Source: Macrostomum lignano
Lineage: Eukaryota
DNA length: 64,000 nucleotides
Direction: 5' to 3'
Assembly: GCA_002269645.1 (NCBI GenBank)
Contig: NIVC01002918.1
Location: 62,001 to 126,000, forward strand
Under the pieces are notes generated by a model. The model saw nothing but the letters and a program-made list of their open reading frames with translations, was not told where the DNA came from and made no database searches. The position numbers were made by a program, and so were the translations under genes. Shown here piece after piece: positions 5,213 to 51,800 of this stretch (its first letter is position 1; each line of letters starts with the position of its first letter).

Positions 5213-5775
5213 AATACACACGGTTTTTCCATTGTCCCACACATATTGGTGCTACCAATAATACACACGGTTTTTCCATTGTCCCACACATATTGGTTCT
5301 ACCAATAATACACACGGTTTTTCCATTGTCCCACACATATTGGTTCTACCAATAATACACACGGTTTTTCCATTGTCCCACACATATTGGTTCTACCAAT
5401 AATACACAAGGTTTTTCCACCACCTCACATATTGGTCCAGCTACAGTTGAGAAAATCTCCCCCCCACGTTCCACATTCCACACTGTCGCGTGCTTTTTTA
5501 CACAGCAAGCTCTGGCTATTTTTAGCACAAGACACACATATTGGGTGGGCCAATAATACACACGGTTTTTTCCTTCATTTCACACATATTGGGTGGGCCA
5601 ATAATACACACGGTTTTTTCCTTCATTTCACACATATTGGGTGGGCCAATAATACACACGATTTTTTCCTTCATTTCACACATATTGGGTGGGCCAATAA
5701 TACACAGTTTTTCCTTCATTTCACACATATTGGGTGGGCCAATAATACACACGGTTTTTTCCTTCATTTCACACA
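5213..5775. repeat. Two related 47-48 bp minisatellite blocks (5 units each) built on TATTGG-N5-CCAATA
   Basis: CACATATTGGTTCTACCAATAATACACACGGTTTTTCC x5, then CACATATTGGGTGGGCCAATAATACACACGGTTTTTTCC x5. Confidence 0.9.
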
Positions 5776-6491
5776 GATAACTCACAGTAAGCATCGAGAA
5801 GGCCCTGAAGTTCAGCCGCCGATGGAGGTCTTGTTGGGGGAGTCGGATCTAGCCAATCTGCTGCATCCGTTTGCCACCACCTTTCGCTCCGAATCGTCCT
5901 AGAGTTGTCATGCAGGAATGTAGCCGAAACAGAGCAAAAGCGGAGCCGTGGAAGCTCGGTCACCAGAGTATAGATGTTATGGCGGGATTGCACGTGGTAG
6001 TAACTCACGCTGAATAGTTCCGCCAGGCTTGTTAATGTCTGCTGATGCCTCGTAATAAATTGGTCATACACTTTTCCAAGAAAAAATGCTGCCACCCAAG
6101 TTCGCCGGTTGTAAATTTGGCCCTGCTTAACCAGGTTTTCATGCAGTTCCGGCACCCCATTGTCAACAGGACCTCGGTTTGTGATGTCGTTGCAGATGGC
6201 TTCTAACTCCCCCTCACTAATTACCTCTGCCTGAGCCGCTTGCTCGTTCTCATATTGAAGCGAACTTCGAAGTTTATGGAATACATCCGTGGCTCTTTCC
6301 TTCATCTTCCGTATTTTCATTTCTTCACTGACTCGCAGATGCCTTTCTTCATCTTCAGATAATCTTTCCCAGAGTTCTCGAACCATGTCTTTAACGTCAT
6401 CCTTATGCTCCTCAACAATAAATTGATCGATGGAATCGATAAAACCTGTGAGATCTTGCATGGTGATTCTGGCTGTAGTTGCATTAAACAT
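5769..6491 (-). CDS. Polinton hypothetical protein (240 aa, helical)
   Basis: Open ATG-initiated ORF with A-rich start context like the other element genes; no recognised motif. Confidence 0.65.
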   Translation of the reverse strand: MFNATTARITMQDLTGFIDSIDQFIVEEHKDDVKDMVRELWERLSEDEERHLRVSEEMKIRKMKERATDVFHKLRSSLQYENEQAAQAEVISEGELEAICNDITNRGPVDNGVPELHENLVKQGQIYNRRTWVAAFFLGKVYDQFITRHQQTLTSLAELFSVSYYHVQSRHNIYTLVTELPRLRFCSVSATFLHDNSRTIRSERWWQTDAADWLDPTPPTRPPSAAELQGLLDAYCELSV

Positions 6492-6619
6492 TTTGTCTAC
6501 AAATATATGAGTAGAGTGTTTTAAATAGTTTAGAATTAAAAAAGCAACTGAAAGTTACAGAAAAAGGTTTAGTAAGTCAGGATTTACTTACGAAGATACG
6601 ATGCGAATTCGAGCGTCTG

Positions 6620-6868
6620 CTAGAAACAAATTTCTCCTATTTCTTTCAGCAGTCTGCTTATTTCTTTATTAGAAGCATATAATACAAACCCCCCCCCCAC
6701 CACCCCCCCAAGGAGAAGCATGGTGGAAAGAGAGATTGTAACCGAAACCAGTGTGCTCAAGACTGTACACTTGTGTGGAGAGAAGAGAAGCGAAGGCCAG
6801 AAGGCCAGAAAACTTAACTCTTCTCCCAAACAGCCGCTAATCCAGCTGAATTTTCTTGCTTGAATCAT
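6620..6868 (-). CDS. Small hydrophobic ORF (82 aa) overlapping the PLA2 stop codon (ATGA)
   Basis: Its ATG overlaps the TGA of the upstream gene. Its C-terminus GGGFVLYASNKEISRLLKEIG resembles the PLA2 tail GAGFALHAPRKELGRLLKELG. Confidence 0.45.
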   Translation of the reverse strand: MIQARKFSWISGCLGEELSFLAFWPSLLFSPHKCTVLSTLVSVTISLSTMLLLGGVVGGGFVLYASNKEISRLLKEIGEICF

Positions 6869-7314
6869 TCTGCTTTCTCAACCCCCAGCTCTTTCAGCAG
6901 TCTTCCTAATTCTTTCCTTGGTGCGTGCAATGCAAAGCCCGCCCCCAAACAGCCGCCGACCCCCAACCCCAGTTTTGTCTTACTAAAAATAACAGCTTTA
7001 ACTAGCTTCCGAGCGATCGATTCCCTCCACCCGCTTGAAACCCCTATATTGTCTAGTCTCTTAAGCATTTCTTTGTCCCAACGATTCTTCTCCTCAGGAA
7101 AATCTCTATATTTAACGTCATGCCACATGCAGACAGAGTCTAGCTCGTTCACAGGCTCATGCCCAGGATTTGGATTATCGTTTGTATCTAACTGAATTTC
7201 AAGTGGATTCAAAGGCCCGCAATATTTGTACCCGGGAATGGTCCAGCCTTTGTTTGGATGAGGAAGCTTTTGTATCAGTCCATGTGAATCTAACTTACCA
7301 CCAGAGCGTTGCAT
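6865..7314 (-). CDS. Parvovirus VP1u-type phospholipase A2 (PLA2X-like entry protein)
   Basis: Ca-binding loop PGYKYCGPLN and catalytic helix ELDSVCMWHDVKY (HDxxY). Confidence 0.88.
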   Translation of the reverse strand: MQRSGGKLDSHGLIQKLPHPNKGWTIPGYKYCGPLNPLEIQLDTNDNPNPGHEPVNELDSVCMWHDVKYRDFPEEKNRWDKEMLKRLDNIGVSSGWRESIARKLVKAVIFSKTKLGLGVGGCLGAGFALHAPRKELGRLLKELGVEKAE

Positions 7315-7344
7315 TATTTTATTTTAAATTTTCTTTTTAAAAAA

Positions 7345-8382
7345 ATGACAGATCAGAAACTTAAAAAACTCTACTACAGCGACAAAGGATTCTTTGTAGG
7401 AAAAAATGCAGTCACCAAACTCGCAGAACTAAGTAAGGAACCAAAAGCTACAGTAGAAAAGTGGCTCTCTAAGCAAGCAGTCTACCAAGTCTATTTCCCA
7501 CCAGTAAAATTTGAAAGGCCCCATTTCAGTATTTATAAACCTAATGAGGCGCACCAAGCAGATCTTCTGTTTCTCCCCAATGACTCGGGCTACAAGTATG
7601 CTCTCACAATTACAGATGTTGCCTCCAGATATAAGGAAGCGAGACCGCTTAAGACGAAGAAGTCAGAAGCAGTTGCAGCCGCCCTCCAAGATATTTATAA
7701 AAACTCACCCCTTAGCTACCCTGAAACCTTTATGACTGATCCTGGCAAAGAATTCATGGGTGCAGTGAAATCACTTCTACATAAGCATGACACAGAGATT
7801 CGCTATGGCAGAACAAACTTGCACAGAGATCAGGCTTTTGTGGAAAGATTCAATCTAACTCTAGCCAAGAGGCTATTCACTAAGCAGACAGCAGAGGAGC
7901 TGAAACTAAAAAGTGGCCAATACTATACCAAGTGGACAGACCGGCTCCCCACTGTTATAGAGCAACTGAACAATGAAGTCACGCGCATGACTGAATTGAA
8001 ACCGTCCCATGCAATTAAACAAGACACTGTCGAACTTAAGTCATCTCATAAAACAGACAACAACACGACAACCCCACACAACACACACAACACAAAACAC
8101 ACCTCAAACTACCCTAAGCTTCCAGGAGTTGAATCACCATACATACTGACAAACTCTGAGTTTCTACGCTTTTTATATCTACCTGGAGAGCTAGAGAAAG
8201 ACACTAAAAGAAGAGCTACAGATCCATACTTCAGCCTTGATGTACATAAAATAGACAGACATTTTACCTCCGACTCTGGTGACTATTACTTTTTATCTCA
8301 GGCCTTTAACCCTAAATCCCCCACACGGTCATTCACTAGAGCTGAACTCCTAGTGATACCGGCTGACACGGAAATTAATTAA
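7345..8382 (+). CDS. INT: Retroviral-like DDE integrase
   Basis: HQADLLFL, FMTDPGKEF and QAFVERFN triad. ATG at 7345 in AAAAAATG context (the ORF track starts at a TTG). Confidence 0.95.
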   Translation: MTDQKLKKLYYSDKGFFVGKNAVTKLAELSKEPKATVEKWLSKQAVYQVYFPPVKFERPHFSIYKPNEAHQADLLFLPNDSGYKYALTITDVASRYKEARPLKTKKSEAVAAALQDIYKNSPLSYPETFMTDPGKEFMGAVKSLLHKHDTEIRYGRTNLHRDQAFVERFNLTLAKRLFTKQTAEELKLKSGQYYTKWTDRLPTVIEQLNNEVTRMTELKPSHAIKQDTVELKSSHKTDNNTTTPHNTHNTKHTSNYPKLPGVESPYILTNSEFLRFLYLPGELEKDTKRRATDPYFSLDVHKIDRHFTSDSGDYYFLSQAFNPKSPTRSFTRAELLVIPADTEIN

Positions 8383-8398
8383 AATATTAAAATAAAAA

Positions 8399-8845
8399 AT
8401 GACAAAGATTGAAACCAGAACCATCAATAAACTCAATAAAATCATTGAATCAAAGAAACCAGGTCTTATATCAATTAAAGGTGTCAAAGTAAAAATCGAT
8501 CCCACGCAGCAAATAGTTGAGTGTAATGAGCAAAGACACAGCATAACAGATGAAAAGTCAGGAGGAATCCTACCATTAGCAGCTCTTATTCCGATCATTG
8601 CAGGCGCTGTAAGTGCCGCAGGTGGTGTAGCTGGAGGTGTAGCAACTGCTGTTAAAGCTGGGAATGATAGAGCCCACCAGCTAGAATTGCAAAAGATTGC
8701 AAGAGACAAAGGTATAACAATTAAGGCAGGAGAGGGCTGCCCCGATCGTGATGATTGTGAGCATGAAAATTCTGTAAGCAAGTCTGACATTGTCAAAGCC
8801 ATCATGACACTGCACAATGCTGGGTTTACAATAATGCGGATGTGA
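8399..8845 (+). CDS. Adenovirus pX/pre-Mu-like core or membrane protein (148 aa)
   Basis: SGG-ILPLAALIPIIAGAVSAAGGVA resembles the adenovirus pX C-terminus RGG-ILPLLIPLIAAAIGAVPGIA. Confidence 0.65.
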   Translation: MTKIETRTINKLNKIIESKKPGLISIKGVKVKIDPTQQIVECNEQRHSITDEKSGGILPLAALIPIIAGAVSAAGGVAGGVATAVKAGNDRAHQLELQKIARDKGITIKAGEGCPDRDDCEHENSVSKSDIVKAIMTLHNAGFTIMRM

Positions 8846-8969
8846 TGAGGTTTAAAATCCCACTTTATCCAGCTTCATAAACCTAACGCTACTTATAGTA
8901 TGTAGAAACAGTTCAACTTTTCTATCAGGGTGGTCACCCTCAAAATTTTTTTTTATTTTAGAGAAAAAA

Positions 8970-19800: not shown

Positions 19801-21836
19801 TCGGCCTTTTTCCAATTCCACCGCACCAGCTTCTTCACACGGCACTCCTGCTCTAATCTTCCGCTTGTGATCAAGATCGGCCAGTGGTCGGAGCTCAGTG
19901 CCTTGACAACCTCCCAGCTCCATCGCTGCTCGCGGCTGCCATGGCAGAAGGTGACGTCGGGTGTAGATTCTACGTCCGTGCCCCTGCCGACTCTCGTCAC
20001 TTTGCCGTCGTTGAGGCAGATCATGCCGTGCGCATCCGCCCAATCCGTCAAATCGTCACCTCTGGCATTTTCCGCAGCGCTGTTATCCCAGGCCGCGTCG
20101 TGGGCGTTGAAGTCGCCTCCGACAATCCAATCCTCTCCTGCTGGGATTCCAGCTGCTTCGATCTGCTCTTTTCCACCAGGCGGCATGTAGCAGTTAGCAA
20201 TCTTGATCTTATTGCCGCCCTTGCACACCTCCATCGCCATCACTTCTAGCCGACCATCCCTTCCTCTCCTCTCCACCTCAATCATTTTGAAGCTGATCCC
20301 ATTCTTTATCACCATAGCAATTCCCCCTCCACGGGCTTTCCAACACCCTTGCGATCTCCGCCTGTCTTGCCTCACTACAGCGTAGCCTGGAACGACCGGG
20401 TCCTCGTCCTCCGCCCTGAGCTTGGTCTCCTGCAGCATCGCCACGTCCACACGCCTTTCCGCCAGCATCATACGCAGCTCTTCTCTTTTAGCCCCCATGT
20501 GATCGCAGTTCCACTGCATGATGACCCAGCTCGCGGTGCCTTCCTCTTTGGTCTCCACCGATTCCATCTTCTTTCCGCCCGCTGCACTGTTGCCTTCTTT
20601 CCCCTTATACCAATCATCCAGGCACTCTTTGCATTTCCATCCACCAGCCCTCTTCCACTTCGCCAACAGCTCCCGACTAACCTCCCCCGTGCAGCACCAG
20701 TGCACTCTCTTCTCGCAGAGGCTGCAGCTCGCACCGACTCCTCTGCGGCAGTACCTCTTGCACTCCGCACATCTAACTGGCCTCGGTTCCACCAGCCTCC
20801 TGCCCATTTCCGGGGCTACGTCTGCGATGCCACGGCACTCAGTACAGTTCCAGTGCTCTTGCTTAACCGCTCTCCATCTGCTGACCCCCGAGCAGCTCCT
20901 GTGCGCCGTTCTACCGCACTTGCTGCAGCTCAGCCCCAGGAAGTCAGCTCTCATGGTCCTCGTACATTCCGTGCAGCTCTTCTTGCTCCTGCTCGGCTTC
21001 TCTCCTGGCTCAGCGGCCTCATCACCTTCCCTGTCCACCTGCAGCTCCTCCTCTCTTTTTGAGTCGTTTCCGCTGTTTTTATGGGTTTCTTTTTGGATTT
21101 TTCGGCTTTCGCTTTTCTTCTGGGCCTCCACACTGCTAGTCCTGTCTCCTGCCGTGGCCTCCCGTTCGCCGGTGCCGTCCCTTCTCGGGCTGAGGTGCTC
21201 CCTCAGCTTGCTCACAAGCTCTCTCTTCTCGACTGCCCGCCAAGCTTCCGCCGTGGCCTTGTCATACGCCCCGCGCTTCCCCTTCTCGTGCCTCCTGCTG
21301 TAATTCTCAACAAAGCTTTCGGCTCTGCTGCTATCGATCCACGACGTTAGCTGACACCCAAACCACTGAATCTGCACAGATTCACGGCCTCTGTCCCGCT
21401 TCCTCCGCTCCAGCACTTCGCCCGGCCACCATGGCCAACCGGTGAGCTTGGCCCAGACCACCTCTCCCTCCGGCTGTCTCACTTCGCGTTCCTCCTCGTC
21501 CACCATCGCCTCCTCTCTCATCTCCTTATGCTCCTCTTCCTTCTGCGTTCTTCCTTCCTTACTCCTGCAGCACGGCCCGATCCACTCCTCCTCTCCCTCT
21601 CCTTGTCTCGGTCCTTTTTCCCTCGCGTAGAACCTGGCCCTGCACAGCTCGCTGCATTTTAAATGTAATTTGCCTTTGCAGCACGCGCATTCTGGGCCTC
21701 TTCCGCGGATTCGGCCCCCGCATCTGGCACAGCTCCTTTTATCGCTCTCGCCCCTCGCTGCTGGTCCTGGGTTCGTCTCCACGTCTCCCGCTTTCAACAT
21801 CTCCTTGCTATCCTTGCATCCTTGATTGCTAGACAT
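16854..21836 (-). CDS. LINE polyprotein (1660 aa): 2A - PHD - PWWP - PHD - PHD - APE endonuclease - RT - RNase H - CCHC-like zinc motif
   Basis: QWNC..., LQETK, GGDFNAH, SDHWP (APE); YRPVSLTS, QAGFR, LFDFERAFD, PQGSVLSP, FADD (RT); FTDGS, AELYAL, TDSKS, WIPSH.G..GNE.AD (RNase H); CRHC...H...C. No stops. Confidence 0.95.
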   Translation of the reverse strand: MSSNQGCKDSKEMLKAGDVETNPGPAARGESDKRSCARCGGRIRGRGPECACCKGKLHLKCSELCRARFYAREKGPRQGEGEEEWIGPCCRSKEGRTQKEEEHKEMREEAMVDEEEREVRQPEGEVVWAKLTGWPWWPGEVLERRKRDRGRESVQIQWFGCQLTSWIDSSRAESFVENYSRRHEKGKRGAYDKATAEAWRAVEKRELVSKLREHLSPRRDGTGEREATAGDRTSSVEAQKKSESRKIQKETHKNSGNDSKREEELQVDREGDEAAEPGEKPSRSKKSCTECTRTMRADFLGLSCSKCGRTAHRSCSGVSRWRAVKQEHWNCTECRGIADVAPEMGRRLVEPRPVRCAECKRYCRRGVGASCSLCEKRVHWCCTGEVSRELLAKWKRAGGWKCKECLDDWYKGKEGNSAAGGKKMESVETKEEGTASWVIMQWNCDHMGAKREELRMMLAERRVDVAMLQETKLRAEDEDPVVPGYAVVRQDRRRSQGCWKARGGGIAMVIKNGISFKMIEVERRGRDGRLEVMAMEVCKGGNKIKIANCYMPPGGKEQIEAAGIPAGEDWIVGGDFNAHDAAWDNSAAENARGDDLTDWADAHGMICLNDGKVTRVGRGTDVESTPDVTFCHGSREQRWSWEVVKALSSDHWPILITSGRLEQECRVKKLVRWNWKKADWQGYKQRIEESCEKEAVDCSSTRSVEEAMRSIITRAARQTVGTKTVASRNRNLMDEEVVQMLKERDEAWEGADDEERQRRDEEVRELISKKKREEWNYLLEKNGTAAKMWTVLNRLKGRKSNEDSRVLLHEGKEYKSSTAKAGAFAREYKRVSNIKTPVGFRWARRAVTRRLAEAGPDGRDAQEISVEEVYNALEELDGSKAAGEDNIHPKLLRALPGCMIEAIQVLFNQSYDEAQVPQNWRRARIIPLLKPGKDAALVGSYRPVSLTSCLGKWMERILSKRIQYHLEDKALLSDSQAGFRAGRSTEDQLLRLTQAMEDAFQKGEKGVLALFDFERAFDKVWRHGLLWKMLELGLSRKLVKWVRSWLVNRMARVRYQDRDSAGVVMRQGLPQGSVLSPILFIIFINDLLRRIEGMPNMEVSGFADDLACWSCSKDEEVAASSIKQAVEVVQEWSTQWRLPIAAKKCTLTLFGLSSKCKEPKRINIRINGEDMEWVPHPRFLGVTYDRRLNFAKHVQEVAQACKSRIQMMRRLAGSDWGWRSGLLRQTYVALIESKIMYGATAWMPWISRACWRKLEVTQRRATRIIGGLLATTPIDGVREESGTEELEALARWRVVRKMDSLLRAKVGSIRWKLASEGPACRLRRESWRTWARRYMLEWEVDLPRLSEAEREPPWIKLRHVTFDDGGGRPDTEEECRKMGERRLREAGGEADILIFTDGSVDKEGKGGGSLVVLRYDSGEVIEKRMVAGGQLASSMQAELYALKEAIEWLEANNNWQKAVVATDSKSGIQAIKRASRNPIVCSIRKALSEMEGREMVLLWIPSHCGIVGNEVADEWANRAVREVSSEGIGVMASTMARLARRRCRRKVWRHERMRETYGGSEGPRKEPEFASRKMEVSFRRWRTGHSLELAAFRKRIGLQQEGKCRHCGMEEETIEHVVACPVLDSCWRGWRSGILSEVHTNAEEALKVWEWWKRKPPENC
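21762..21836 (-). other. 2A-like ribosomal skipping (StopGo) peptide
   Basis: MSSNQGCKDSKEMLKAG-DVETNPG/P matches D(V/I)ExNPG/P. Confidence 0.85.
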
Positions 21837-21839
21837 TAT

Positions 21840-21921
21840 GCCCTCCTTCGTCTGGCTTTCGTTGATTTCCAACTTCGGCCAGTCTACAGCACACCGCGTA
21901 GAGGTGTGAGGGCTGTGCTGC
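21840..21921 (-). ncRNA. HDV-like self-cleaving ribozyme at the LINE 5' end
   Basis: P1 GCAGCAC:GUGCUGU (G1-U wobble), P2 GCCCUC:GAGGGC, P3 ACC:GGU, L3 UCUACGC, P1.1 CU:AG, P4 CUGGC:GCCAG, J4/2 ACGAA. G1 coincides with the TSD-defined boundary. Confidence 0.85.
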
Positions 21922-22646
21922 TGCTGTTGTTGTTGTTGTTCTAGATATTTTATGACTTCCGCCTGATCTGGCAAATCGAACCATTGTTTAAAGTGCTTGT
22001 ACTTTTTGAATCTAGTCAGGTTGACACCGTTATCATACATAAGTCTCAGGACTTCTGGGGCCTTTAGTATTTCTATATCTCTAGCAAGAGCAAAAGTCAC
22101 TAGATCTCTATAGTTCTTTAGCTGTTTGTCCGAGATTCTCTCTTGGTTCTTGGTCATAAAAGTCAGTAAGGTTTCTGTGAAAGGAATGCTCTTAGTTTCC
22201 AAGCCTTTGACAACAGAAATATGTTTCTTATTTATGTCGATATAATATTCCACTGGTTCATTATAAATGTTTTTTCTCCACATACTTATTCCAAATACAT
22301 ATTTCCCATCATGTTCGACACGCTCTACTGGTCCAAAAATGTTATCTGTCACTTTTAGTTGTGATTGATGTGGTTGTGATTGTTGTGGTTGCGGCTGTAT
22401 CTGTGGTGCTTCTGGAATTTTGCCCAAAACCTTTTGCACTTGGGTTTCCTGTATGTCGTCGATAGTTTCTTTGACCTGATCAATATTTTTCTTAGCTTCT
22501 CCATACCCGGGTTTATGAAACTCTGTGGCTGCTTGGACAAACTCATTGTAGGATTGTTGCTCCTTATTTATTAGCCCGGTAACTCGTTTCTCTGCTTGTG
22601 CTAGCTTCTCCAATTCAGATATCTGCTGTGTACTTTTCCGCTTCAT
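21922..22646 (-). pseudogene. N-terminal part of the interrupted Polinton gene (ends ...IKYLEQQQQQ), fused in frame to the LINE ORF
   Basis: First ~241 codons of the 1930-aa ORF have Polinton-like AT-rich composition and an A-rich ATG context. Confidence 0.85.
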
Positions 22647-22676
22647 TTCTTATTTTATTTTATTTTTAGTTAAAAA

Positions 22677-23963
22677 ATGAACGACCCACTGACACCAGTT
22701 TTCTACAAGATTAACAAGCCTATTTTGAGTGATGATAGCACAATCAAAGCGACTCAGGTAAGAGTTCCCAGTCAGGAAAATCAGAATGAAACTAATCTTG
22801 GTCCTGGTCAAACACTGACATTTACATACAATGGATGTTCGTCTCTGGTTAGTGTGCACAGTCTTAAGAGCGGCTTCCATATGACATTTCAATTCAAGAC
22901 AAAAGGTGGTGCGGATGCGGCTCGTGCTAACGTTGACAAGCATGATGCGGATGTGGCTCTGATCAGTAACTTTTGGGCGTACATGTTCAAGGAGTTTAGT
23001 GTATCGAATGGGAGCACAGAGTTGGAGCGAATCGCCAACTTTGGAATTGTCTATGACGCTCATTGTTTGATCGAGAATCCTGATTTTATTCAGTTGGGAA
23101 GTGGTGCGGGTTATATTGCAGATGAAAAAGAAGGAGACATCAATGACAGTGGCTATAAAAAGAGGAAGAAGAGATACAACTATGCATTGCAAGGTGCTGA
23201 TGATGCTGCTAAGAACCCGCAGTATCGGTCTGTTGATGTATTTGTACCATTGAGATTCATGAGTGGATTCTGTAATACATTTAATCGACTGACTAGTAAC
23301 TTTAGCTACACCTTTAGGATGACTAGAGATGATCGCAGTAGAGTGTTGTGGACTGGGGCGGACCACACAAGGATGGAGGTGAAGCTAACCGGAATCGAGC
23401 TGTATTTGGAAGTCATTGAGCCAAAGACCGCACTAAAAGCAGACTATCTTAAGGCAATAGAGAAGGACATTGATGTTGCATACACGGCCTACATGTGTCG
23501 AGATGAGCGAAACGAAACTAGAACAAACATCTGCATTAAAGAGGGATCATGCAGCAATCCAAGGTATATTATTATTAACATAAGAAACCCAAATAGCATT
23601 ATACGCTACATGCATGGAGACGTGCGGTCCATTCAGCATGAAATCAGTGATAATCTTTACCCTGCACTGCCACAAAATGGAGATTTCAGTCAGAACAAGA
23701 TTAGCAAATTTTATAGCGAGTTGGTCGACTTGGCTGTGAAAGAGAACAACGGAATTGCTATCACTGCTCTTCAATATGGAACTCTATATCCAATGTTTGG
23801 CGCTGATGTGTCTGCCAGACAAATGCCTACTGATAACAGCCCTGTGAATATCGTGACTAACATTGAGAGGACTGCCGCAACACCCGTGGACCTGTACATT
23901 ATCTATGCATTTGAGAGGAAGGTGAAGCTTAACATGATCAACAATTCATCCAGTAAAGTTTAA
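22677..23963 (+). CDS. PY: Major capsid protein (double jelly-roll)
   Basis: 428-aa beta-rich ORF in the usual position upstream of the penton gene; N-terminal DDSTI...N.....LTF pattern. Assigned by size, context and pattern. Confidence 0.8.
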   Translation: MNDPLTPVFYKINKPILSDDSTIKATQVRVPSQENQNETNLGPGQTLTFTYNGCSSLVSVHSLKSGFHMTFQFKTKGGADAARANVDKHDADVALISNFWAYMFKEFSVSNGSTELERIANFGIVYDAHCLIENPDFIQLGSGAGYIADEKEGDINDSGYKKRKKRYNYALQGADDAAKNPQYRSVDVFVPLRFMSGFCNTFNRLTSNFSYTFRMTRDDRSRVLWTGADHTRMEVKLTGIELYLEVIEPKTALKADYLKAIEKDIDVAYTAYMCRDERNETRTNICIKEGSCSNPRYIIINIRNPNSIIRYMHGDVRSIQHEISDNLYPALPQNGDFSQNKISKFYSELVDLAVKENNGIAITALQYGTLYPMFGADVSARQMPTDNSPVNIVTNIERTAATPVDLYIIYAFERKVKLNMINNSSSKV

Positions 23964-23984
23964 ATATTTTTTTAGGACAAAAAA

Positions 23985-24848
23985 ATGGAAGCTATAGCCG
24001 AAAGACTAAATAACATTGTTTCACACTCTAAGGAGAGCATTCCTATTACAATAACCGGGCGAATTAATGACTCAAACGGGATGTTTGTTGAAAAATTAGA
24101 GCAGGCGATTCGCCTGGATCCAGGCGCTAATTACCATGTCTATCTTAACGACTTCACTGGTTGGTCAAACGTTCCCAATGTGATGGCAGCAAATAATAAG
24201 TTTTATTACAAATGGAAAGGTGCAGCAGCAGACCCTGTGGTATTCCATGTGAGCACGCAAAGTGTGGATACCTACAATAACTTTCTAGAAAATGTCTTTA
24301 CTAAGAGAGGCCATTTTGAGACACCTGATGCGAGTAAGCCAGAGAAGAAACTGTTCCCTGTCAAACTAACCTATGATCTCACTGTAATGAGAGTGGTCAT
24401 GCAAGTTCACAAAGATGCGGAGGTTGAGTTTAAAGATGACACTTGGTATAGGGAACTGGGATTCGAGAAGAAAGTTTATAAGGCAGAATCCGCGGCGCGG
24501 ACCGCCACTCAAGCATCGGGGACTGTTACAATGGTCCGGGAAAGTGTACGCGGTTTGTTCTTAGCACCCAATATAGCAGACATTGTAAAGGGTTTGAATA
24601 TTCTAATCAGAAGCAATCTCAGTCTTGATTGGGTATTTAAGGGAAAGCGAACGAATATTTTGTACAACATCTCCAACTCTGTTGCTGGAGGACAGATGGT
24701 GGTAGAGAAACCAAATCCAGTGAAAAGAGTTGTATTGAGTAATAAGGAGATTCACGAGATTGTGCTACAGTTTGAGACTGAAGATGGGATGGGTGTTGAT
24801 TTCAACGGTGAAGAGTTTGTATTGACGTTGATCATTGAGAGAATGTAA
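23985..24848 (+). CDS. PX: Minor capsid protein (penton, single jelly-roll)
   Basis: PNV..ANNKFYY, ELGF, NILIRSNL and the C-terminal EDG..VDFNGEEFVLTLII pattern of Polinton pentons. Confidence 0.82.
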   Translation: MEAIAERLNNIVSHSKESIPITITGRINDSNGMFVEKLEQAIRLDPGANYHVYLNDFTGWSNVPNVMAANNKFYYKWKGAAADPVVFHVSTQSVDTYNNFLENVFTKRGHFETPDASKPEKKLFPVKLTYDLTVMRVVMQVHKDAEVEFKDDTWYRELGFEKKVYKAESAARTATQASGTVTMVRESVRGLFLAPNIADIVKGLNILIRSNLSLDWVFKGKRTNILYNISNSVAGGQMVVEKPNPVKRVVLSNKEIHEIVLQFETEDGMGVDFNGEEFVLTLIIERM

Positions 24849-24852
24849 GAAA

Positions 24853-25089
24853 TCACAATTGCCTAATGATTTCTGCAAAGTTATAGTAGCTGTCGTAATC
24901 GTTAATGACTACTCCATACTTATGAAACCAGTGTCTTTGAAGAGCTAGATTAATATTAGGGGCATTGATATCAACATCGGGCCAATATTTTCTCATGTAC
25001 TCGCTGCATTCCTTCTTGCATTGGTACTTACTCTTGTAATTAGGCTCGTGCGCTTTGTAATAAGAACCTGGAGAGACAACTGGAAACAT
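24853..25089 (-). CDS. Small aromatic-rich ORF (78 aa) starting at the inner edge of the right TIR
   Basis: ATG preceded by TTTTTCTCTAAAA, the same start context as other element genes; converges on the penton gene with a 4-bp gap. Confidence 0.5.
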   Translation of the reverse strand: MFPVVSPGSYYKAHEPNYKSKYQCKKECSEYMRKYWPDVDINAPNINLALQRHWFHKYGVVINDYDSYYNFAEIIRQL

Positions 25090-48890: not shown

Positions 48891-51800
48891 AGAGTCGGCA
48901 GTGCAAATCCCGAGCATGCCAGGCCAGTCCCAGAGCGCCATCCCCAGCTCCAATTTACGCAGGCTTAAGCAGCGCCATCAGCATGAATTTATCAGTGAGC
49001 CGGGCGAATCCCTCGCCCTCTCTCTTACATCCTCGCTGATCGATCAAGTGATTTTCTGACCAAGAAATCGGGCCGCAGAGAGGAGCTGGGAGTTAGGGAG
49101 GCTGGGGGAGCTCAAGGCCGGTTGCTGAAGAGAGGAGGGAACAGAAGATGACCAGGCCGAGCTGAATAATTTACGGCAAAGCCCGAGACCCGGGCTCATG
49201 CTGTCCAGTACTGCTGCTGCAAGCTCGAACTGCTATTCAGCTAAGCTTAATATTTACTAAAGTGCGCAGGTCTTGAAGGAGGACCCGGGCTCGATTTCTG
49301 AAGTCGCCGCATCAATAAAAGTGCAAACCTCCTGTGCAGTGAGGAGTTTTGCCAGCTCTTTTCAAAGAAGTTCAGGCCCTGCTGGGCATTCTGACGTCCG
49401 CTCAAAACTGCAGGTGGCTTCGAACAGACGCGAGAGCGATCAGAACTCGAGACTGATTTCTAGGAAACACGCGGACTCTGGACTGATAATTGGCAGCTCA
49501 GCGGGGGTTAGGGGCCGGGGGGAGGTGGCTGGCTGAGAAGGCGCCAGCGATTCCGCGATAACTCGGGGCGAGCGGGAGGGGGTGGCGGAGCTGCTGCTGC
49601 TGCACTCTGGTAGGAGCAGAAACTGCAGCAGGGGGCGAATAGAGGCTAGAGAGAGAGGGTGGGACCGGATGCCCCCAGGCGGTGTTATAAAGCCCGCCGC
49701 TGCTCATGGCGGGCTGTACGCACGCACGCGCGCTCGCTGGCACGCGGCAGCTGCGGACAGGCGGGCTGGATGGAGCCGCTGCAGACTGACGGGGCCGCAC
49801 CGGTAAGAGAATTCCTGAGCTGCTTGCTCACGGCTGTGTGAGATGCCAAATTGCTCTATACTTATGCTACACTATAATAATACCAAAAGCAGAAACAAAG
49901 ACAGCAACAGACACAACCCAGTTCTAAATGTCCTTGCTTGAACCTCCTTGGCCAGCTGCCTTCCTCAGGGGATCCCGCGCACAGCCCGCCCGCCTCTTCA
50001 CCTTATCTGAACAGTTTGTAAAACTAGTTTGGGAAGTTATGGGAAAATGGGGAAGCGCTGGGCTGGGAAGGAAGCAGATAGGGGAAGTTTAGGGCGCAGT
50101 GCGACAGACAAGGCAGACACCTATGCCTATAATGCCAGTAGCATTCCGCCCAATGAAAGGCGGCAGGTAACTCCGCCACCCCAGGCCGGGAATTCGGGAG
50201 AGGGGCAGGAGATGAAGCGGGCTATAAAACAGCGGAGGAAGCCCACGGACCAAAGCCTCGGACGCCAGGGAGAGAGAGAGCAGCCAGGCCCGAATCCCAG
50301 ATCCCCCACTTCCGGCCAGAGGAGCGCCGCCTCCAGGGGACGTGCTTCTTTGCATCCGCATGCCGCCAGCCCAGCGCACCTGACCATGGAATGTAAAGAA
50401 GTATGTTCTCTGGCCGCGCTGAGCAGCGAGGCCCTCGTCCAGACTCTTCCCCATCGCATCAATCCCACTAGCGGTCTCGGAGGCTCTGGGATTAAGAATT
50501 TGAGAATCAGAGAGTCAGTGAGGCCGAATCAGTCGGCAGGTTGGCACTGCAGAGCACACCGTAGAAATTAGAAACCAAAACTGAGGGCACTCGCGGTGAC
50601 GCATGCCTGCCCTGTGCCCTCCCCTCAGCTTCGTCTTGAAGCAAAAAAACACGCAGAGGCCTCCGCTCCCCCCGATCGATACGGGATGCGGCGCACTCGG
50701 GTGCGAGCGGCCAGCCACTGTCTGTGCGCTGCCACGCATCCCCTGCGCAAAACTGGCCAATATTCCCCCTTCCAATTTAACCCATATTCCGGACCCGCCA
50801 TCCCCATACATTCCTTCCCCCCCCCCACAAGCATGACTGACTGGGAGGGCAGGCAGTTCAGCGGGCCACCGCAGGCCCTGGGCCGCCACGCCGCTGCCGC
50901 GTGACTGCAGGGCCCCGCAGGCCCATCTGTGTAAACAGAAGCGGCAGCGCTCAGATTCAAATCAGCGCCACCCCAATTGGGCCCAAATTGTGTGAGAGAT
51001 GCGTTTTGGTTTGACATCTCGCTGACCAATTTCGGTGTGAAAGCCGTGAAAGCCGAGGCCGAGACAGTTCACTGGCTGGCTGCTGGCGACAGGAAGCGGG
51101 CAGCAGCGGCAGATTGCCGGGCCTGATAGGGACTGCTGTGCGAGTGAAATCGGGGCCGAAATTGACGCTACTTAGCAACAGTAGGGTGGCGCGAATGTGC
51201 TTACTTAGAGTACTATATAGGAATGTATGACGGTTCCAGTTCGCATAGTAAAAACCAAGTAAACAGACAGCTGGAGTGCCATAAAGTTGGTCAGCCCAGT
51301 TCCACTTCAGATGCCTTTCCCAGCCAAGGGCTGAATAACAAAGACCCGGGGATACAATAACCAAGCTTGTTCATGCGTGGGAGGTCATAAATCTATAACC
51401 ATTTTTCCCACTGTGCAGCCCTGTGACTTTGTTTATCTCCCCGTGACACCACTGAGACTGGCGCCTAGCGCAGGCAGATGCCGCGAGCCTTATCGATTAT
51501 TTTCGAGCCTGGCTAGATCAGGGACTATTAGTTTAGGAACTTGGACTGGAAGCAAGTAATCGGGGACGTCTTTAATTAGTCATATGTATGTGTGTGACAA
51601 AAATTAAAACCATCTCAAATTCTCTCAATTACAATTCAGAGATAAGCTTTTATCCTTTGATTAAGCTTTCAGACTATTAACTACAGTGAGCACGAATTTT
51701 GCTTTTGATATTTCTAAGAGTTTCCGAAAATCACATGCACTGGGCATTACAAAGACCAAAGAGCATTCGCTTGAAGATATGGACGGGCAGTTTTATAAAA

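What the first reader, a model, noticed from the sequence alone, without database searches (positions are those of the whole stretch)
21840..21921. Complete HDV-like ribozyme defines the LINE 5' end
Seen on the minus strand: GCAGCAC A GCCCUC AC ACC UCUACGC GGU GUGCUGU AG ACUGGC...GCCAG ACGAA G GAGGGC. All helices form (P1 with a G1-U wobble, P1.1 CU:AG, P2, P3, P4), and a candidate catalytic C lies in J4/2. The core CACCUCUACGCGGUG resembles the trypanosomatid L1Tc/ingi Pr77 core CACCUCAACGUGGUG. The predicted cut coincides with the boundary derived independently from the TSD. HDV-like ribozymes are established for R2, RTE and L1Tc/ingi; this instance is invisible to the ORF track.
Basis: partly seen in the sequence, partly recalled or inferred. 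Interest (0 to 1): 0.82.

Follow-up and report, generated by a model that had tools for sequence, protein, structure and literature searches.

The report
Self-cleaving ribozyme heading a LINE retrotransposon
An 82-base RNA fold of the hepatitis-delta-virus ribozyme type sits at the first base of an intact jumping gene (a LINE); nine related elements keep the same fold through matching base changes, so it is very probably a real self-cutting RNA that trims the element's transcript to its exact 5' end, a known trick in a lineage where it had not been annotated.

Summary
On the minus strand, 21921-21840 folds into the full HDV-like double pseudoknot. P1 is 7 bp with a G1.U wobble, and P2, P3, P1.1 and P4 all form. 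L3 reads U..CG and J4/2 reads CGAA, with the candidate catalytic C at 21850.

Rfam's curated thresholds miss it. A permissive local scan gives only RF02682 at 25.5 bits against a cut-off of 44.

Comparison with relatives settles the matter. Nine related LINEs from metagenomes (33-46% protein identity) carry the same fold just upstream of the ORF. In a hand-built helix-only alignment, 99% of pair cells are paired and 16 of 21 pairs show compensatory changes. A covariance model built without the window finds this site as the only significant hit in 64 kb (37.3 bits, E 2.6e-6).

The element spans 21921-16828. It is one intact ORF with 2A, PWWP, APE, RT and RNase H, a (CAA)n tail and a 12-bp direct repeat at both ends. 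It sits in a polyglutamine-coding tract of a Maverick/Polinton-like element.

The resemblance to Pr77 is real (13/15) but generic to the active site. A bacterial HDV-like consensus matches 14/15.

Verdict: a new member of a known kind. Cleavage itself is untested.

The parts
21840..21921 (-). HDV-like self-cleaving ribozyme (82 nt); predicted cleavage is 5' of G21921
   Evidence: Manual parse and descriptor. Leave-one-out covariance model: 37.3 bits, E 2.6e-6. Covariation in 10 homologous sites.
21915..21921 (-). P1 5' strand GCAGCAC (G1 = 21921)
   Evidence: Pairs with 21892-21886 (GUGCUGU): 7 bp including the G1.U wobble. 4 of 7 P1 pairs show compensatory changes among relatives.
21908..21913 (-). 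P2 5' strand GCCCUC
   Evidence: Pairs with 21845-21840 (GAGGGC), 6 bp. All 5 aligned P2 pairs covary.
21893..21905 (-). P3 (ACC/GGU) enclosing L3 UCUACGC; L3 positions 2-3 (CU) form P1.1 with AG at 21885-21884
   Evidence: Among relatives P3 varies ACC/GGU, GCC/GGC and CCC/GGG. P1.1 varies CU:AG, CC:GG, UC:GA and UC:GG.
21886..21892 (-). P1 3' strand GUGCUGU
21852..21882 (-). P4 (CUGGC ... GCCAG) with an inner hairpin GUUG-GAAAU-CAAC
   Evidence: P4 differs in sequence and length in every relative but always pairs.
21846..21851 (-). J4/2 ACGAAG; candidate catalytic C at 21850
   Evidence: CGAA is invariant in all 10 sites.
16828..21921 (-). Full-length LINE (5094 bp), the only copy in the window
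   Evidence: The boundaries come from the ribozyme start and the direct repeat. blastn and tblastn find no other copy. GC is about 0.56 against 0.40 in the flanks.
16854..21836 (-). LINE ORF, 1660 aa, uninterrupted: PWWP (21467-21240), APE endonuclease (20519-19875), reverse transcriptase (19043-18288), RNase H (17666-17277)
   Evidence: Pfam hits above the curated cut-offs. The first AUG lies 4 nt after the ribozyme.
21762..21785 (-). 2A 'ribosome-skipping' motif DVETNPGP, residues 18-25 of the ORF
   Evidence: Read directly from the translation. The motif is present in all 10 related elements, 49-129 codons after N1.
16828..16853 (-). Short 3' UTR and tail: ACATCAG(CAA)6C
   Evidence: Relatives have the same layout: stop codon, then 0-25 nt, then a tail that is mostly (CAA)n.
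21922..21933 (-). 5' copy of the candidate target-site duplication ACAACAACAGCA
   Evidence: Exact 12-bp direct repeat ending at the base before G1. Low complexity.
16816..16827 (-). 3' copy of the candidate target-site duplication ACAACAACAGCA

Best explanation

The proposed mechanism, with each step marked shown or inferred:

- Transcription probably starts upstream, as read-through from the host gene or from a preceding tandem copy (inferred).
- The nascent RNA folds into the double pseudoknot (fold shown).
- The C at 21850 in J4/2 catalyses cleavage 5' of G21921. This releases an RNA that starts exactly at the element's first base and keeps the whole ribozyme (inferred from the family's known chemistry).
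- That RNA is the template for target-primed reverse transcription. Priming uses the (CAA)n tail at CAA/CAG-type repeats (inferred from the flanks).
- The ORF stays open from N1 through the ribozyme to the 2A motif (shown). Translation therefore starts at or just after the ribozyme, and 2A discards the leader peptide (inferred).
- In head-to-tail arrays the same cut also makes the 3' end of the upstream unit. This follows if the ribozyme is active.
For: 1. The complete canonical topology is present: 7-bp P1 with G1.U, 3-bp P3, L3 of the form U..CG, 2-bp P1.1, and J4/2 reading C-G-A-A.

2. Nine related LINEs (33-46% amino-acid identity over the ORF) have the same fold at the same place: L001, L003, L004, L008, L011, L014, L015, L016 and L017.

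3. Covariation is strong. 99% of 210 pair cells are paired and 16 of 21 pairs carry changes on both sides. None of 500 shuffles reaches these values, and slid controls give 36-47% paired.

4. The leave-one-out covariance model scores the site at 37.3 bits, E 2.6e-6.

5. Ribozyme lengths run from 62 to 82 nt and do not differ by multiples of three. The 2A frame relative to N1 differs in 2 of 10 elements, yet the RNA pairs are kept. The constraint is therefore on the RNA, not on a peptide.

6. Position: N1 abuts the 12-bp direct repeat, and removing the insert restores the host ORF. In four loci N1 lies 22-32 nt after the stop codon of an upstream copy's ORF.

7. The copy looks recently active, with an uninterrupted 1660-aa ORF.

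8. There is precedent. HDV-like ribozymes process R2, L1Tc and other LINEs from co-transcripts (PMC3774820, PMC3185411, PMC4035085, PMC7761336).
Against: - No cleavage assay or RNA-end data exist for this element.
- Rfam's curated models do not reach threshold (25.5 against 44 bits).
- The P2 and P4 columns of the covariation alignment were chosen by me on the basis of pairing, which inflates the percentage paired. The P1, P3 and P1.1 columns are fixed by position and agree with the unguided MAFFT alignment.
- Only the window and L004 have the G1.U wobble. Six relatives have G-C and two have A-U at the cleavage-site pair, which may lower activity or shift the site in them.
- Nested-only MFE folding of the 82 nt is unremarkable (z -1.56), as expected for a pseudoknot.
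- More distant relatives that carry 2A (L005-L007) show no such motif in the sequence available.
Confidence: 0.85

Rival explanations
1. Chance look-alike: a GC-rich stretch next to a CAG repeat that happens to satisfy an HDV descriptor and has no function.
For: The loose descriptor hits 0.79 times per shuffled 64-kb window and once more in the real window. Four of the six metagenome pattern hits are evidently chance, lying in bacterial-like coding sequence.
Against: The leave-one-out model gives E 2.6e-6. Nine relatives have the fold at the homologous position, with 16 of 21 covarying pairs. CGAA is invariant in J4/2.
Confidence: 0.02
2. The conserved element is a protein-coding constraint, an N-terminal leader peptide such as QH.PQPSRGVLR, and not an RNA structure.
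For: The 2A frame is open through the motif in 10 of 10 elements. A similar peptide is encoded in several of them.
Against: Changes come in complementary pairs rather than at synonymous positions. The window has one extra base in J2/3 and encodes a different peptide (HSPHTSTRCAVDW) with the same RNA pairs. L008 and L016 read the motif in another frame. Motif lengths differ by non-multiples of 3.
Confidence: 0.03
3. The fold is real and conserved, but its main job is not cutting. It could act as a cap-independent translation initiation element, as a DNA-level internal promoter like Pr77, or as a protein-binding site.
For: L003 and L004 have no in-frame AUG between N1 and 2A. Reviews cite translation initiation of the uncapped R2 transcript and a possible IRES-like switch in L1Tc (PMC8256844). 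Pr77 is both a promoter and a ribozyme (PMC3383444).
Against: The invariant positions are those of the HDV active site (J4/2 CGAA, L3 U..CG, P1.1). N1 coincides with the element boundary. These roles would add to cleavage rather than replace it. Outside the 15-nt core there is no similarity to Pr77.
Confidence: 0.08
4. The family's ribozyme is genuine, but this copy is catalytically dead or misfolds. The upstream CAG repeat could compete for the P1 3' strand.
For: The upstream ACAGCAG can pair 6 of 7 with GUGCUGU. The nested MFE structure uses other pairings.
Against: This copy has every consensus feature, including the G1.U wobble that most relatives lack, and it has an intact ORF.
Confidence: 0.1

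Closest known systems
[quoted passage not shown]
   Same: An HDV-like ribozyme occupies the first ~77-82 nt of a single-ORF APE-RT-RNase H LINE that also has an N-terminal 2A peptide (PMC3185411, PMC3708506). The layout is the same, including the ACC/GGU P3 and a UC.ACG. L3. The core is 13/15 identical.
   Different: There is no detectable similarity outside the 15-nt active-site core. P1 here is GCAGCAC with G1.U, against CCCUGGC with C1-G. Here the tail is (CAA)n and the flanks are CAA/CAG repeats. Promoter activity is unknown. RT-based clade membership was not tested.
R2 retrotransposon 5' ribozymes (insects and other animals)
   Same: A 5' HDV-like ribozyme releases the element RNA from a co-transcript. 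The ORF is open far upstream without a conserved AUG. The P1 5' strand can match target sequence, and the cDNA end is thought to anneal to the target for second-strand priming (PMC3774820).
   Different: R2 has a restriction-like endonuclease and inserts in 28S rDNA. This element has an APE endonuclease, RNase H, 2A and a microsatellite-like tail and flanks. In the window the P1 5' strand is carried by the element and is not supplied by the target.
Rfam RF02682 (HDV-like ribozyme of Faecalibacterium prausnitzii, drz-Fpra)
   Same: It is the best Rfam match. P1, P3, L3 and P1.1 align, the core is 14/15 identical, and P1.1 is likewise C-G plus U-A.
   Different: The score is below the family's gathering threshold (25.5 against 44 bits). 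P4 and J4/2 are not aligned by the model. The organism and context are unrelated.
Metazoan Ingi-clade and other 2A-bearing LINEs (for example Ingi-1_AC of Aplysia; Odon et al. 2013)
   Same: A single ORF with an active 2A-like sequence 40-80 aa from the N-terminus, sometimes followed by a PHD-type finger before the APE domain (PMC3708506).
   Different: That paper does not mention ribozymes (0 occurrences of the word). The element here also carries a PWWP domain.

Membership tests
HDV-like self-cleaving ribozymes | Nested double-pseudoknot topology in the order P1-P2-P3-L3-P3'-P1'-P1.1-P4-J4/2-P2' | tested here: met
   All five helices are fully paired.
HDV-like self-cleaving ribozymes | P1 of about 7 bp starting at the cleavage site, typically with a G1.U wobble | tested here: met
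   GCAGCAC/GUGCUGU, 7 bp with G1.U. Relatives have G-C (6), A-U (2) or G.U (1).
HDV-like self-cleaving ribozymes | Catalytic cytosine in J4/2 followed by purines (C-N-A-A) | tested here: met
   ACGAAG with C21850. CGAA is invariant in 10 of 10 sites. Its catalytic role was not tested.
HDV-like self-cleaving ribozymes | 3-bp P3 closing a ~7-nt L3 (U at position 1, CG at positions 5-6), with 2-bp P1.1 between L3 and J1/4 | tested here: met
   ACC-UCUACGC-GGU, with CU:AG as P1.1. P3 and P1.1 covary.
HDV-like self-cleaving ribozymes | Helices supported by compensatory substitutions in homologues | tested here: met
   16 of 21 pairs have changes on both sides, and 0 of 500 shuffles match. Caveat: the helix-only alignment was hand-built.
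HDV-like self-cleaving ribozymes | Match to a curated Rfam HDV-type model at gathering score | tested here: not met
   There is no gathering-level hit. The best is RF02682 at 25.5 bits against 44. Rfam's models are narrow and omit the P2 pseudoknot, so this lowers database membership, not the fold assignment.
HDV-like self-cleaving ribozymes | Mg2+-dependent self-cleavage giving 5'-OH and 2',3'-cyclic phosphate ends | not testable with these tools
   Needs a bench assay.
Pr77 hallmark of trypanosomatid L1Tc/ingi elements | Sequence homology across the 77-nt hallmark | tested here: not met
   Only the 15-nt core matches (13/15). With the core removed, 75 of 300 shuffles score as well. A bacterial consensus matches the core better, at 14/15.
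Pr77 hallmark of trypanosomatid L1Tc/ingi elements | Internal RNA polymerase II promoter activity of the same DNA | not testable with these tools
Ingi-type (I-group) APE LINE | Single ORF with APE, RT and RNase H, no ORF1, and an N-terminal 2A | tested here: met
   Pfam hits are above cut-off. DVETNPGP lies at residues 18-25.
Ingi-type (I-group) APE LINE | Placement of the RT domain inside the Ingi clade in an RT phylogeny with reference elements | not tested
The closest named relative is a Macrostomum lignano protein (46% over 53% of the query).

The most novel reading that the evidence does not exclude
The ribozyme and the 2A peptide may work as one module that lets the element borrow host polyglutamine ORFs.

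- The P1 5' strand (G|CAG CAC) is in register with CAA/CAG codons. In 8 of 10 elements the 2A frame is that same register.
- A sense insertion into a polyQ-coding tract is then automatically in frame, as it is in the window (243 host codons fused to the LINE ORF).
- Uncleaved, capped co-transcripts would be translated from the host AUG through the stop-free ribozyme. 2A would then release the LINE protein.
- Cleaved RNAs would serve as retrotransposition templates.
- In tandem arrays the same cut would yield unit-length RNAs, defining both ends.
Probability: 0.12. Interest if true: 0.75.

Novelty: new member of a known kind. Interest (0 to 1): 0.5.

Why it matters
It adds a well-supported lineage to the LINEs that carry 5' HDV-like ribozymes. 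The lineage is not in Rfam and was not found in the literature I searched. Its closest named relative is a protein from the flatworm Macrostomum lignano.

The pairing of a 5' ribozyme with an N-terminal 2A, known from trypanosome L1Tc/ingi, also occurs in animal-type elements. Either that architecture is old or it evolved twice.

The family gives ten naturally varied sequences for studying what the HDV core tolerates. They include G-C or A-U at the cleavage-site pair and a hairpin inserted in L3.

The ORF is open through the ribozyme, and two members lack an AUG before 2A. This makes the family a convenient system for asking how uncapped, ribozyme-headed LINE RNAs are translated.

For annotation, it explains a 1930-aa chimeric ORF that would otherwise be read as one gene.

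Tried and rejected
- Rfam at gathering thresholds found nothing at the site; the only hit in the window was mir-1 elsewhere.
- The plain nested MFE fold is uninformative for a pseudoknot (z -1.56).
- The 15-nt core as a search pattern is not selective: 0.73 matches expected per window at 3 mismatches.
- My loose HDV descriptor is not selective either (0.79 per shuffled window). The strict version was defined post hoc and I give it no weight.
- The exact core pattern CCTCNACGNGG missed the relatives because L3 varies. The Rfam permissive scan found them instead.
- The metagenome pattern scan gave 6 loci, of which 4 (L009, L010, L012, L013) are chance matches in bacterial-like coding sequence.
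- The viral-contig scan gave 0 hits.
- The more distant 2A-bearing relatives L005-L007 gave no HDV-like hit with my model or with Rfam.
- The Pr77 sequence is not in the main text of three papers. I found it in a supplement.
- Ruminski et al. 2011 (PMC3308841) is not held, so its list of LINE clades with ribozymes rests on reviews.
- Two literature searches for this family or for flatworm HDV-like ribozymes found nothing relevant.
- The idea that the host-frame fusion is a general rule was considered and left as unproven. In solitary insertions, open lengths upstream in the ORF frame (243, 58, 12, 17, 94 and at least 122 codons) are not clearly longer than in the other frames.

Full report
**Observation.** Read on the minus strand, 21921-21840 is GCAGCAC A GCCCUC AC ACC UCUACGC GGU GUGCUGU AG A CUGGC (21 nt) GCCAG ACGAAG GAGGGC.
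- P1 is 7 bp and opens with a G1.U wobble.
- P2 is 6 bp and P3 is 3 bp.
- P1.1 pairs CU of L3 with AG of J1/4.
- P4 is 5 bp plus an inner hairpin.
- J4/2 reads A-C-G-A-A-G, which puts the candidate catalytic cytosine at 21850.

**Is it more than chance?** Single-sequence tests are weak.
- The nested MFE fold is unremarkable (z -1.56), as expected for a pseudoknot.
- The 15-nt core is expected 0.73 times per window at three mismatches.
- My loose HDV descriptor hits 0.79 times per shuffled window and once elsewhere in the real window.
- Rfam at curated thresholds reports only mir-1 at 50331-50415.
- A permissive scan of 361 bases gives RF02682, the Faecalibacterium HDV-like ribozyme, at 25.5 bits (E 0.008), below its 44-bit cut-off.

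**The element.** Four nucleotides after the motif an AUG opens a 1660-aa uninterrupted ORF (21836-16854). It has PWWP, APE endonuclease, reverse transcriptase and RNase H domains, all above Pfam cut-offs. Residues 18-25 are DVETNPGP, a canonical 2A ribosome-skipping motif.
- After the stop codon come ACATCAG(CAA)6C and then ACAACAACAGCA. The same 12 bases end at 21922, directly before G1.
- Removing 21921-16828 plus one copy of the repeat joins the two flanks into one continuous host ORF from the ATG at 22646 to the stop at 16344, through a polyglutamine run.
- Because the tract is low-complexity this is supporting rather than decisive evidence.
- The insert is the only copy in the window. Its GC is about 0.56 against 0.40 around it.

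**Relatives.** A protein search found relatives at 31-46% identity. The best named one is from the flatworm Macrostomum lignano, and the rest come from environmental assemblies.
- Fetching their contigs and scanning with Rfam, a DNA pattern and a core regex gave nine further sites with the same fold just upstream of the ORF. They are L001, L003, L004, L008, L011, L014, L015, L016 and L017.
- P1 varies as GCAGCAC/GUGCUGY, GCAGUAC/GUACUGU, ACCACAC/GUGUGGU and GUCACAC/GUGUGGC.
- P3 varies as ACC/GGU, GCC/GGC and CCC/GGG.
- P1.1 varies as CU:AG, CC:GG, UC:GA and UC:GG.
- P2 and P4 differ in sequence and length everywhere. CGAA in J4/2 never changes.

**Covariation.** I built a helix-only alignment of 47 columns.
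- 99% of 210 pair cells are paired, 16 of 21 pairs have changes on both sides, and none of 500 column shuffles reaches any measure.
- Sliding the partners by 1-3 columns drops pairing to 36-47%.
- I chose the P2 and P4 columns by pairing, which flatters those helices. The P1, P3 and P1.1 columns are positional and agree with an unguided MAFFT alignment.

**Leave-one-out test.** A covariance model built from the nine relatives alone, with the window left out, finds 21921-21841 as the only significant match in both strands of the window. It scores 37.3 bits, E 2.6e-6, and the next hit has E 0.31.

**RNA or peptide?** The 2A frame is open from N1 through the motif in all ten elements, so a coding constraint had to be considered. 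Three things argue against it:
- The motif lengths (62-82 nt) do not differ by multiples of three.
- The window's extra J2/3 base changes the encoded peptide but not the pairs.
- L008 and L016 read the motif in another frame.

**Where translation starts.** The open frame is still informative.
- The spacer between the ribozyme and 2A is stop-free in 10 of 10. The naive product of chance values is 7e-10.
- L003 and L004 have no in-frame AUG before 2A.
- Translation therefore seems to begin at or near the ribozyme, with 2A shedding the leader. This recalls what is reported for R2 and proposed for L1Tc (PMC8256844).

**Context of the family.**
- In L001, L008, L011 and L014 a LINE C-terminus lies directly upstream, and its stop codon is 22-32 nt before N1. 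These are head-to-tail tandem copies.
- Tails are mostly (CAA)n or (CA)n-type repeats directly after a very short 3' UTR.
- Eight of ten sites are preceded by CAA/CAG repeats.
- The P1 5' strand resembles the tail: GCAGCAC with (CAA)n(CAG)n, and ACCACAC with CCACCACACAC in L015. This parallels R2, where target-like sequence at the RNA 5' end is thought to help second-strand priming (PMC3774820). I infer, but have not shown, a preference for CAA/CAG-type microsatellites.

**Pr77.** Pr77 is given in Table S3 of PMC8190864 and contains CACCTCAACGTGGTG, 13/15 identical to the window. The Rfam consensus of the bacterial ribozyme is 14/15 identical. With the core removed, the window and Pr77 align no better than shuffles (75 of 300). 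The resemblance therefore reflects the shared active site, not demonstrated kinship. The architectural parallel with L1Tc/ingi is real: a 5' ribozyme, 2A and a single APE-RT-RNase H ORF (PMC3185411, PMC3708506). Clade membership needs an RT phylogeny that I could not run.

**Verdict.** This is a new, unannotated member of the known class of LINE 5' HDV-like ribozymes. Cleavage, promoter activity and the mode of translation remain to be tested.

Noticed in passing
window 21762-21785 (-): There is a canonical 2A ribosome-skipping motif (DVETNPGP) at residues 18-25 of the LINE ORF. The motif is present 49-129 codons after N1 in all ten related elements, and in 25 of 136 homologous proteins fetched.
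   Followed up: partly
window 16854-22646 (-); loci L001-L017: The 2A reading frame is open from the ribozyme's first base in 10 of 10 elements. In 8 of 10 it reads the upstream CAA/CAG repeat as polyglutamine. In the window this fuses 243 host codons to the LINE ORF, giving a mechanical 1930-aa ORF. L003 and L004 have no AUG between N1 and 2A.
   Followed up: partly
window about 5700-25000: The LINE sits inside a Maverick/Polinton-like element with GC 0.40. That element has an rve integrase (7309-8382, +), a Pox_A32-type packaging ATPase (14950-15750, -) and a double-jelly-roll capsid-like ORF (22677-23963, +). The interrupted gene (22646-21922 and 16815-16344, -) has a polyQ tract at the insertion point.
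   Followed up: partly
window 21240-21467 (-): The LINE ORF has a PWWP chromatin-reader domain (Pfam 44.5 bits). Among the hits, a precomputed PWWP domain is listed only for the Macrostomum lignano protein P0001. Other relatives have PHD/C1-type fingers there. It may steer integration.
   Followed up: no
L001 299-1367; L008; L011; L014 3-2733: Head-to-tail tandem LINE copies occur here. An upstream copy's C-terminus and stop codon are followed by 22-32 nt, mostly (CAA)n(CAG)n, and then by the next copy's ribozyme. If the ribozyme is active it would also set the 3' end of the upstream unit.
   Followed up: partly
L004 148-229 and 4793-4830: This relative's L3 carries a 14-nt insert that can form a GAUG-GAAA-CAUC hairpin, which is unusual for HDV-like ribozymes. 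Its tail is (GAA)n followed by ACAGCAGTAC. That repeats the P1 5' strand and the bases before it, so it is either a target duplication that includes P1 or the stub of a next copy.
   Followed up: no
L015 188-194 and 4943-4965; all loci: The P1 5' strand tracks the element's own tail: GCAGCAC with (CAA)n(CAG)n tails, and ACCACAC with a CCACCACACACACAG tail. This suggests that the 5' end and the tail or target co-evolve.
   Followed up: no
L005 about 300-375; L006 about 262-335: More distant 2A-bearing relatives lack the HDV-like motif. They share a conserved ~75-nt 5' UTR block (AAGGGGACTTCAACTCCGTACGT.CGTCTTCGACGTCAGGAGGGCT.GTCCCAC) with nested hairpin potential. Its function is unknown and it has no Rfam match.
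   Followed up: partly
protein P0001 (Macrostomum lignano, UniRef A0A1I8J844): The annotated protein reads ...QHSPQAFKWRAVLRQ...TKEDIM... about 50 residues before its 2A. This looks like a translated ribozyme (CAG CAC AGC CC., then ..UGG CGU GCU GU.). If so, the database protein may be a host-LINE read-through chimera like the one in this window.
   Followed up: no
window 50331-50415 (+): A mir-1 microRNA precursor scores above Rfam's gathering score (48.8 bits). This shows that the window is from an animal genome.
   Followed up: no
window 17301-17395 (-): There is a weak second hit of my ribozyme model (13.2 bits, E 0.31) inside the RNase H coding region. I take it as chance.
   Followed up: no
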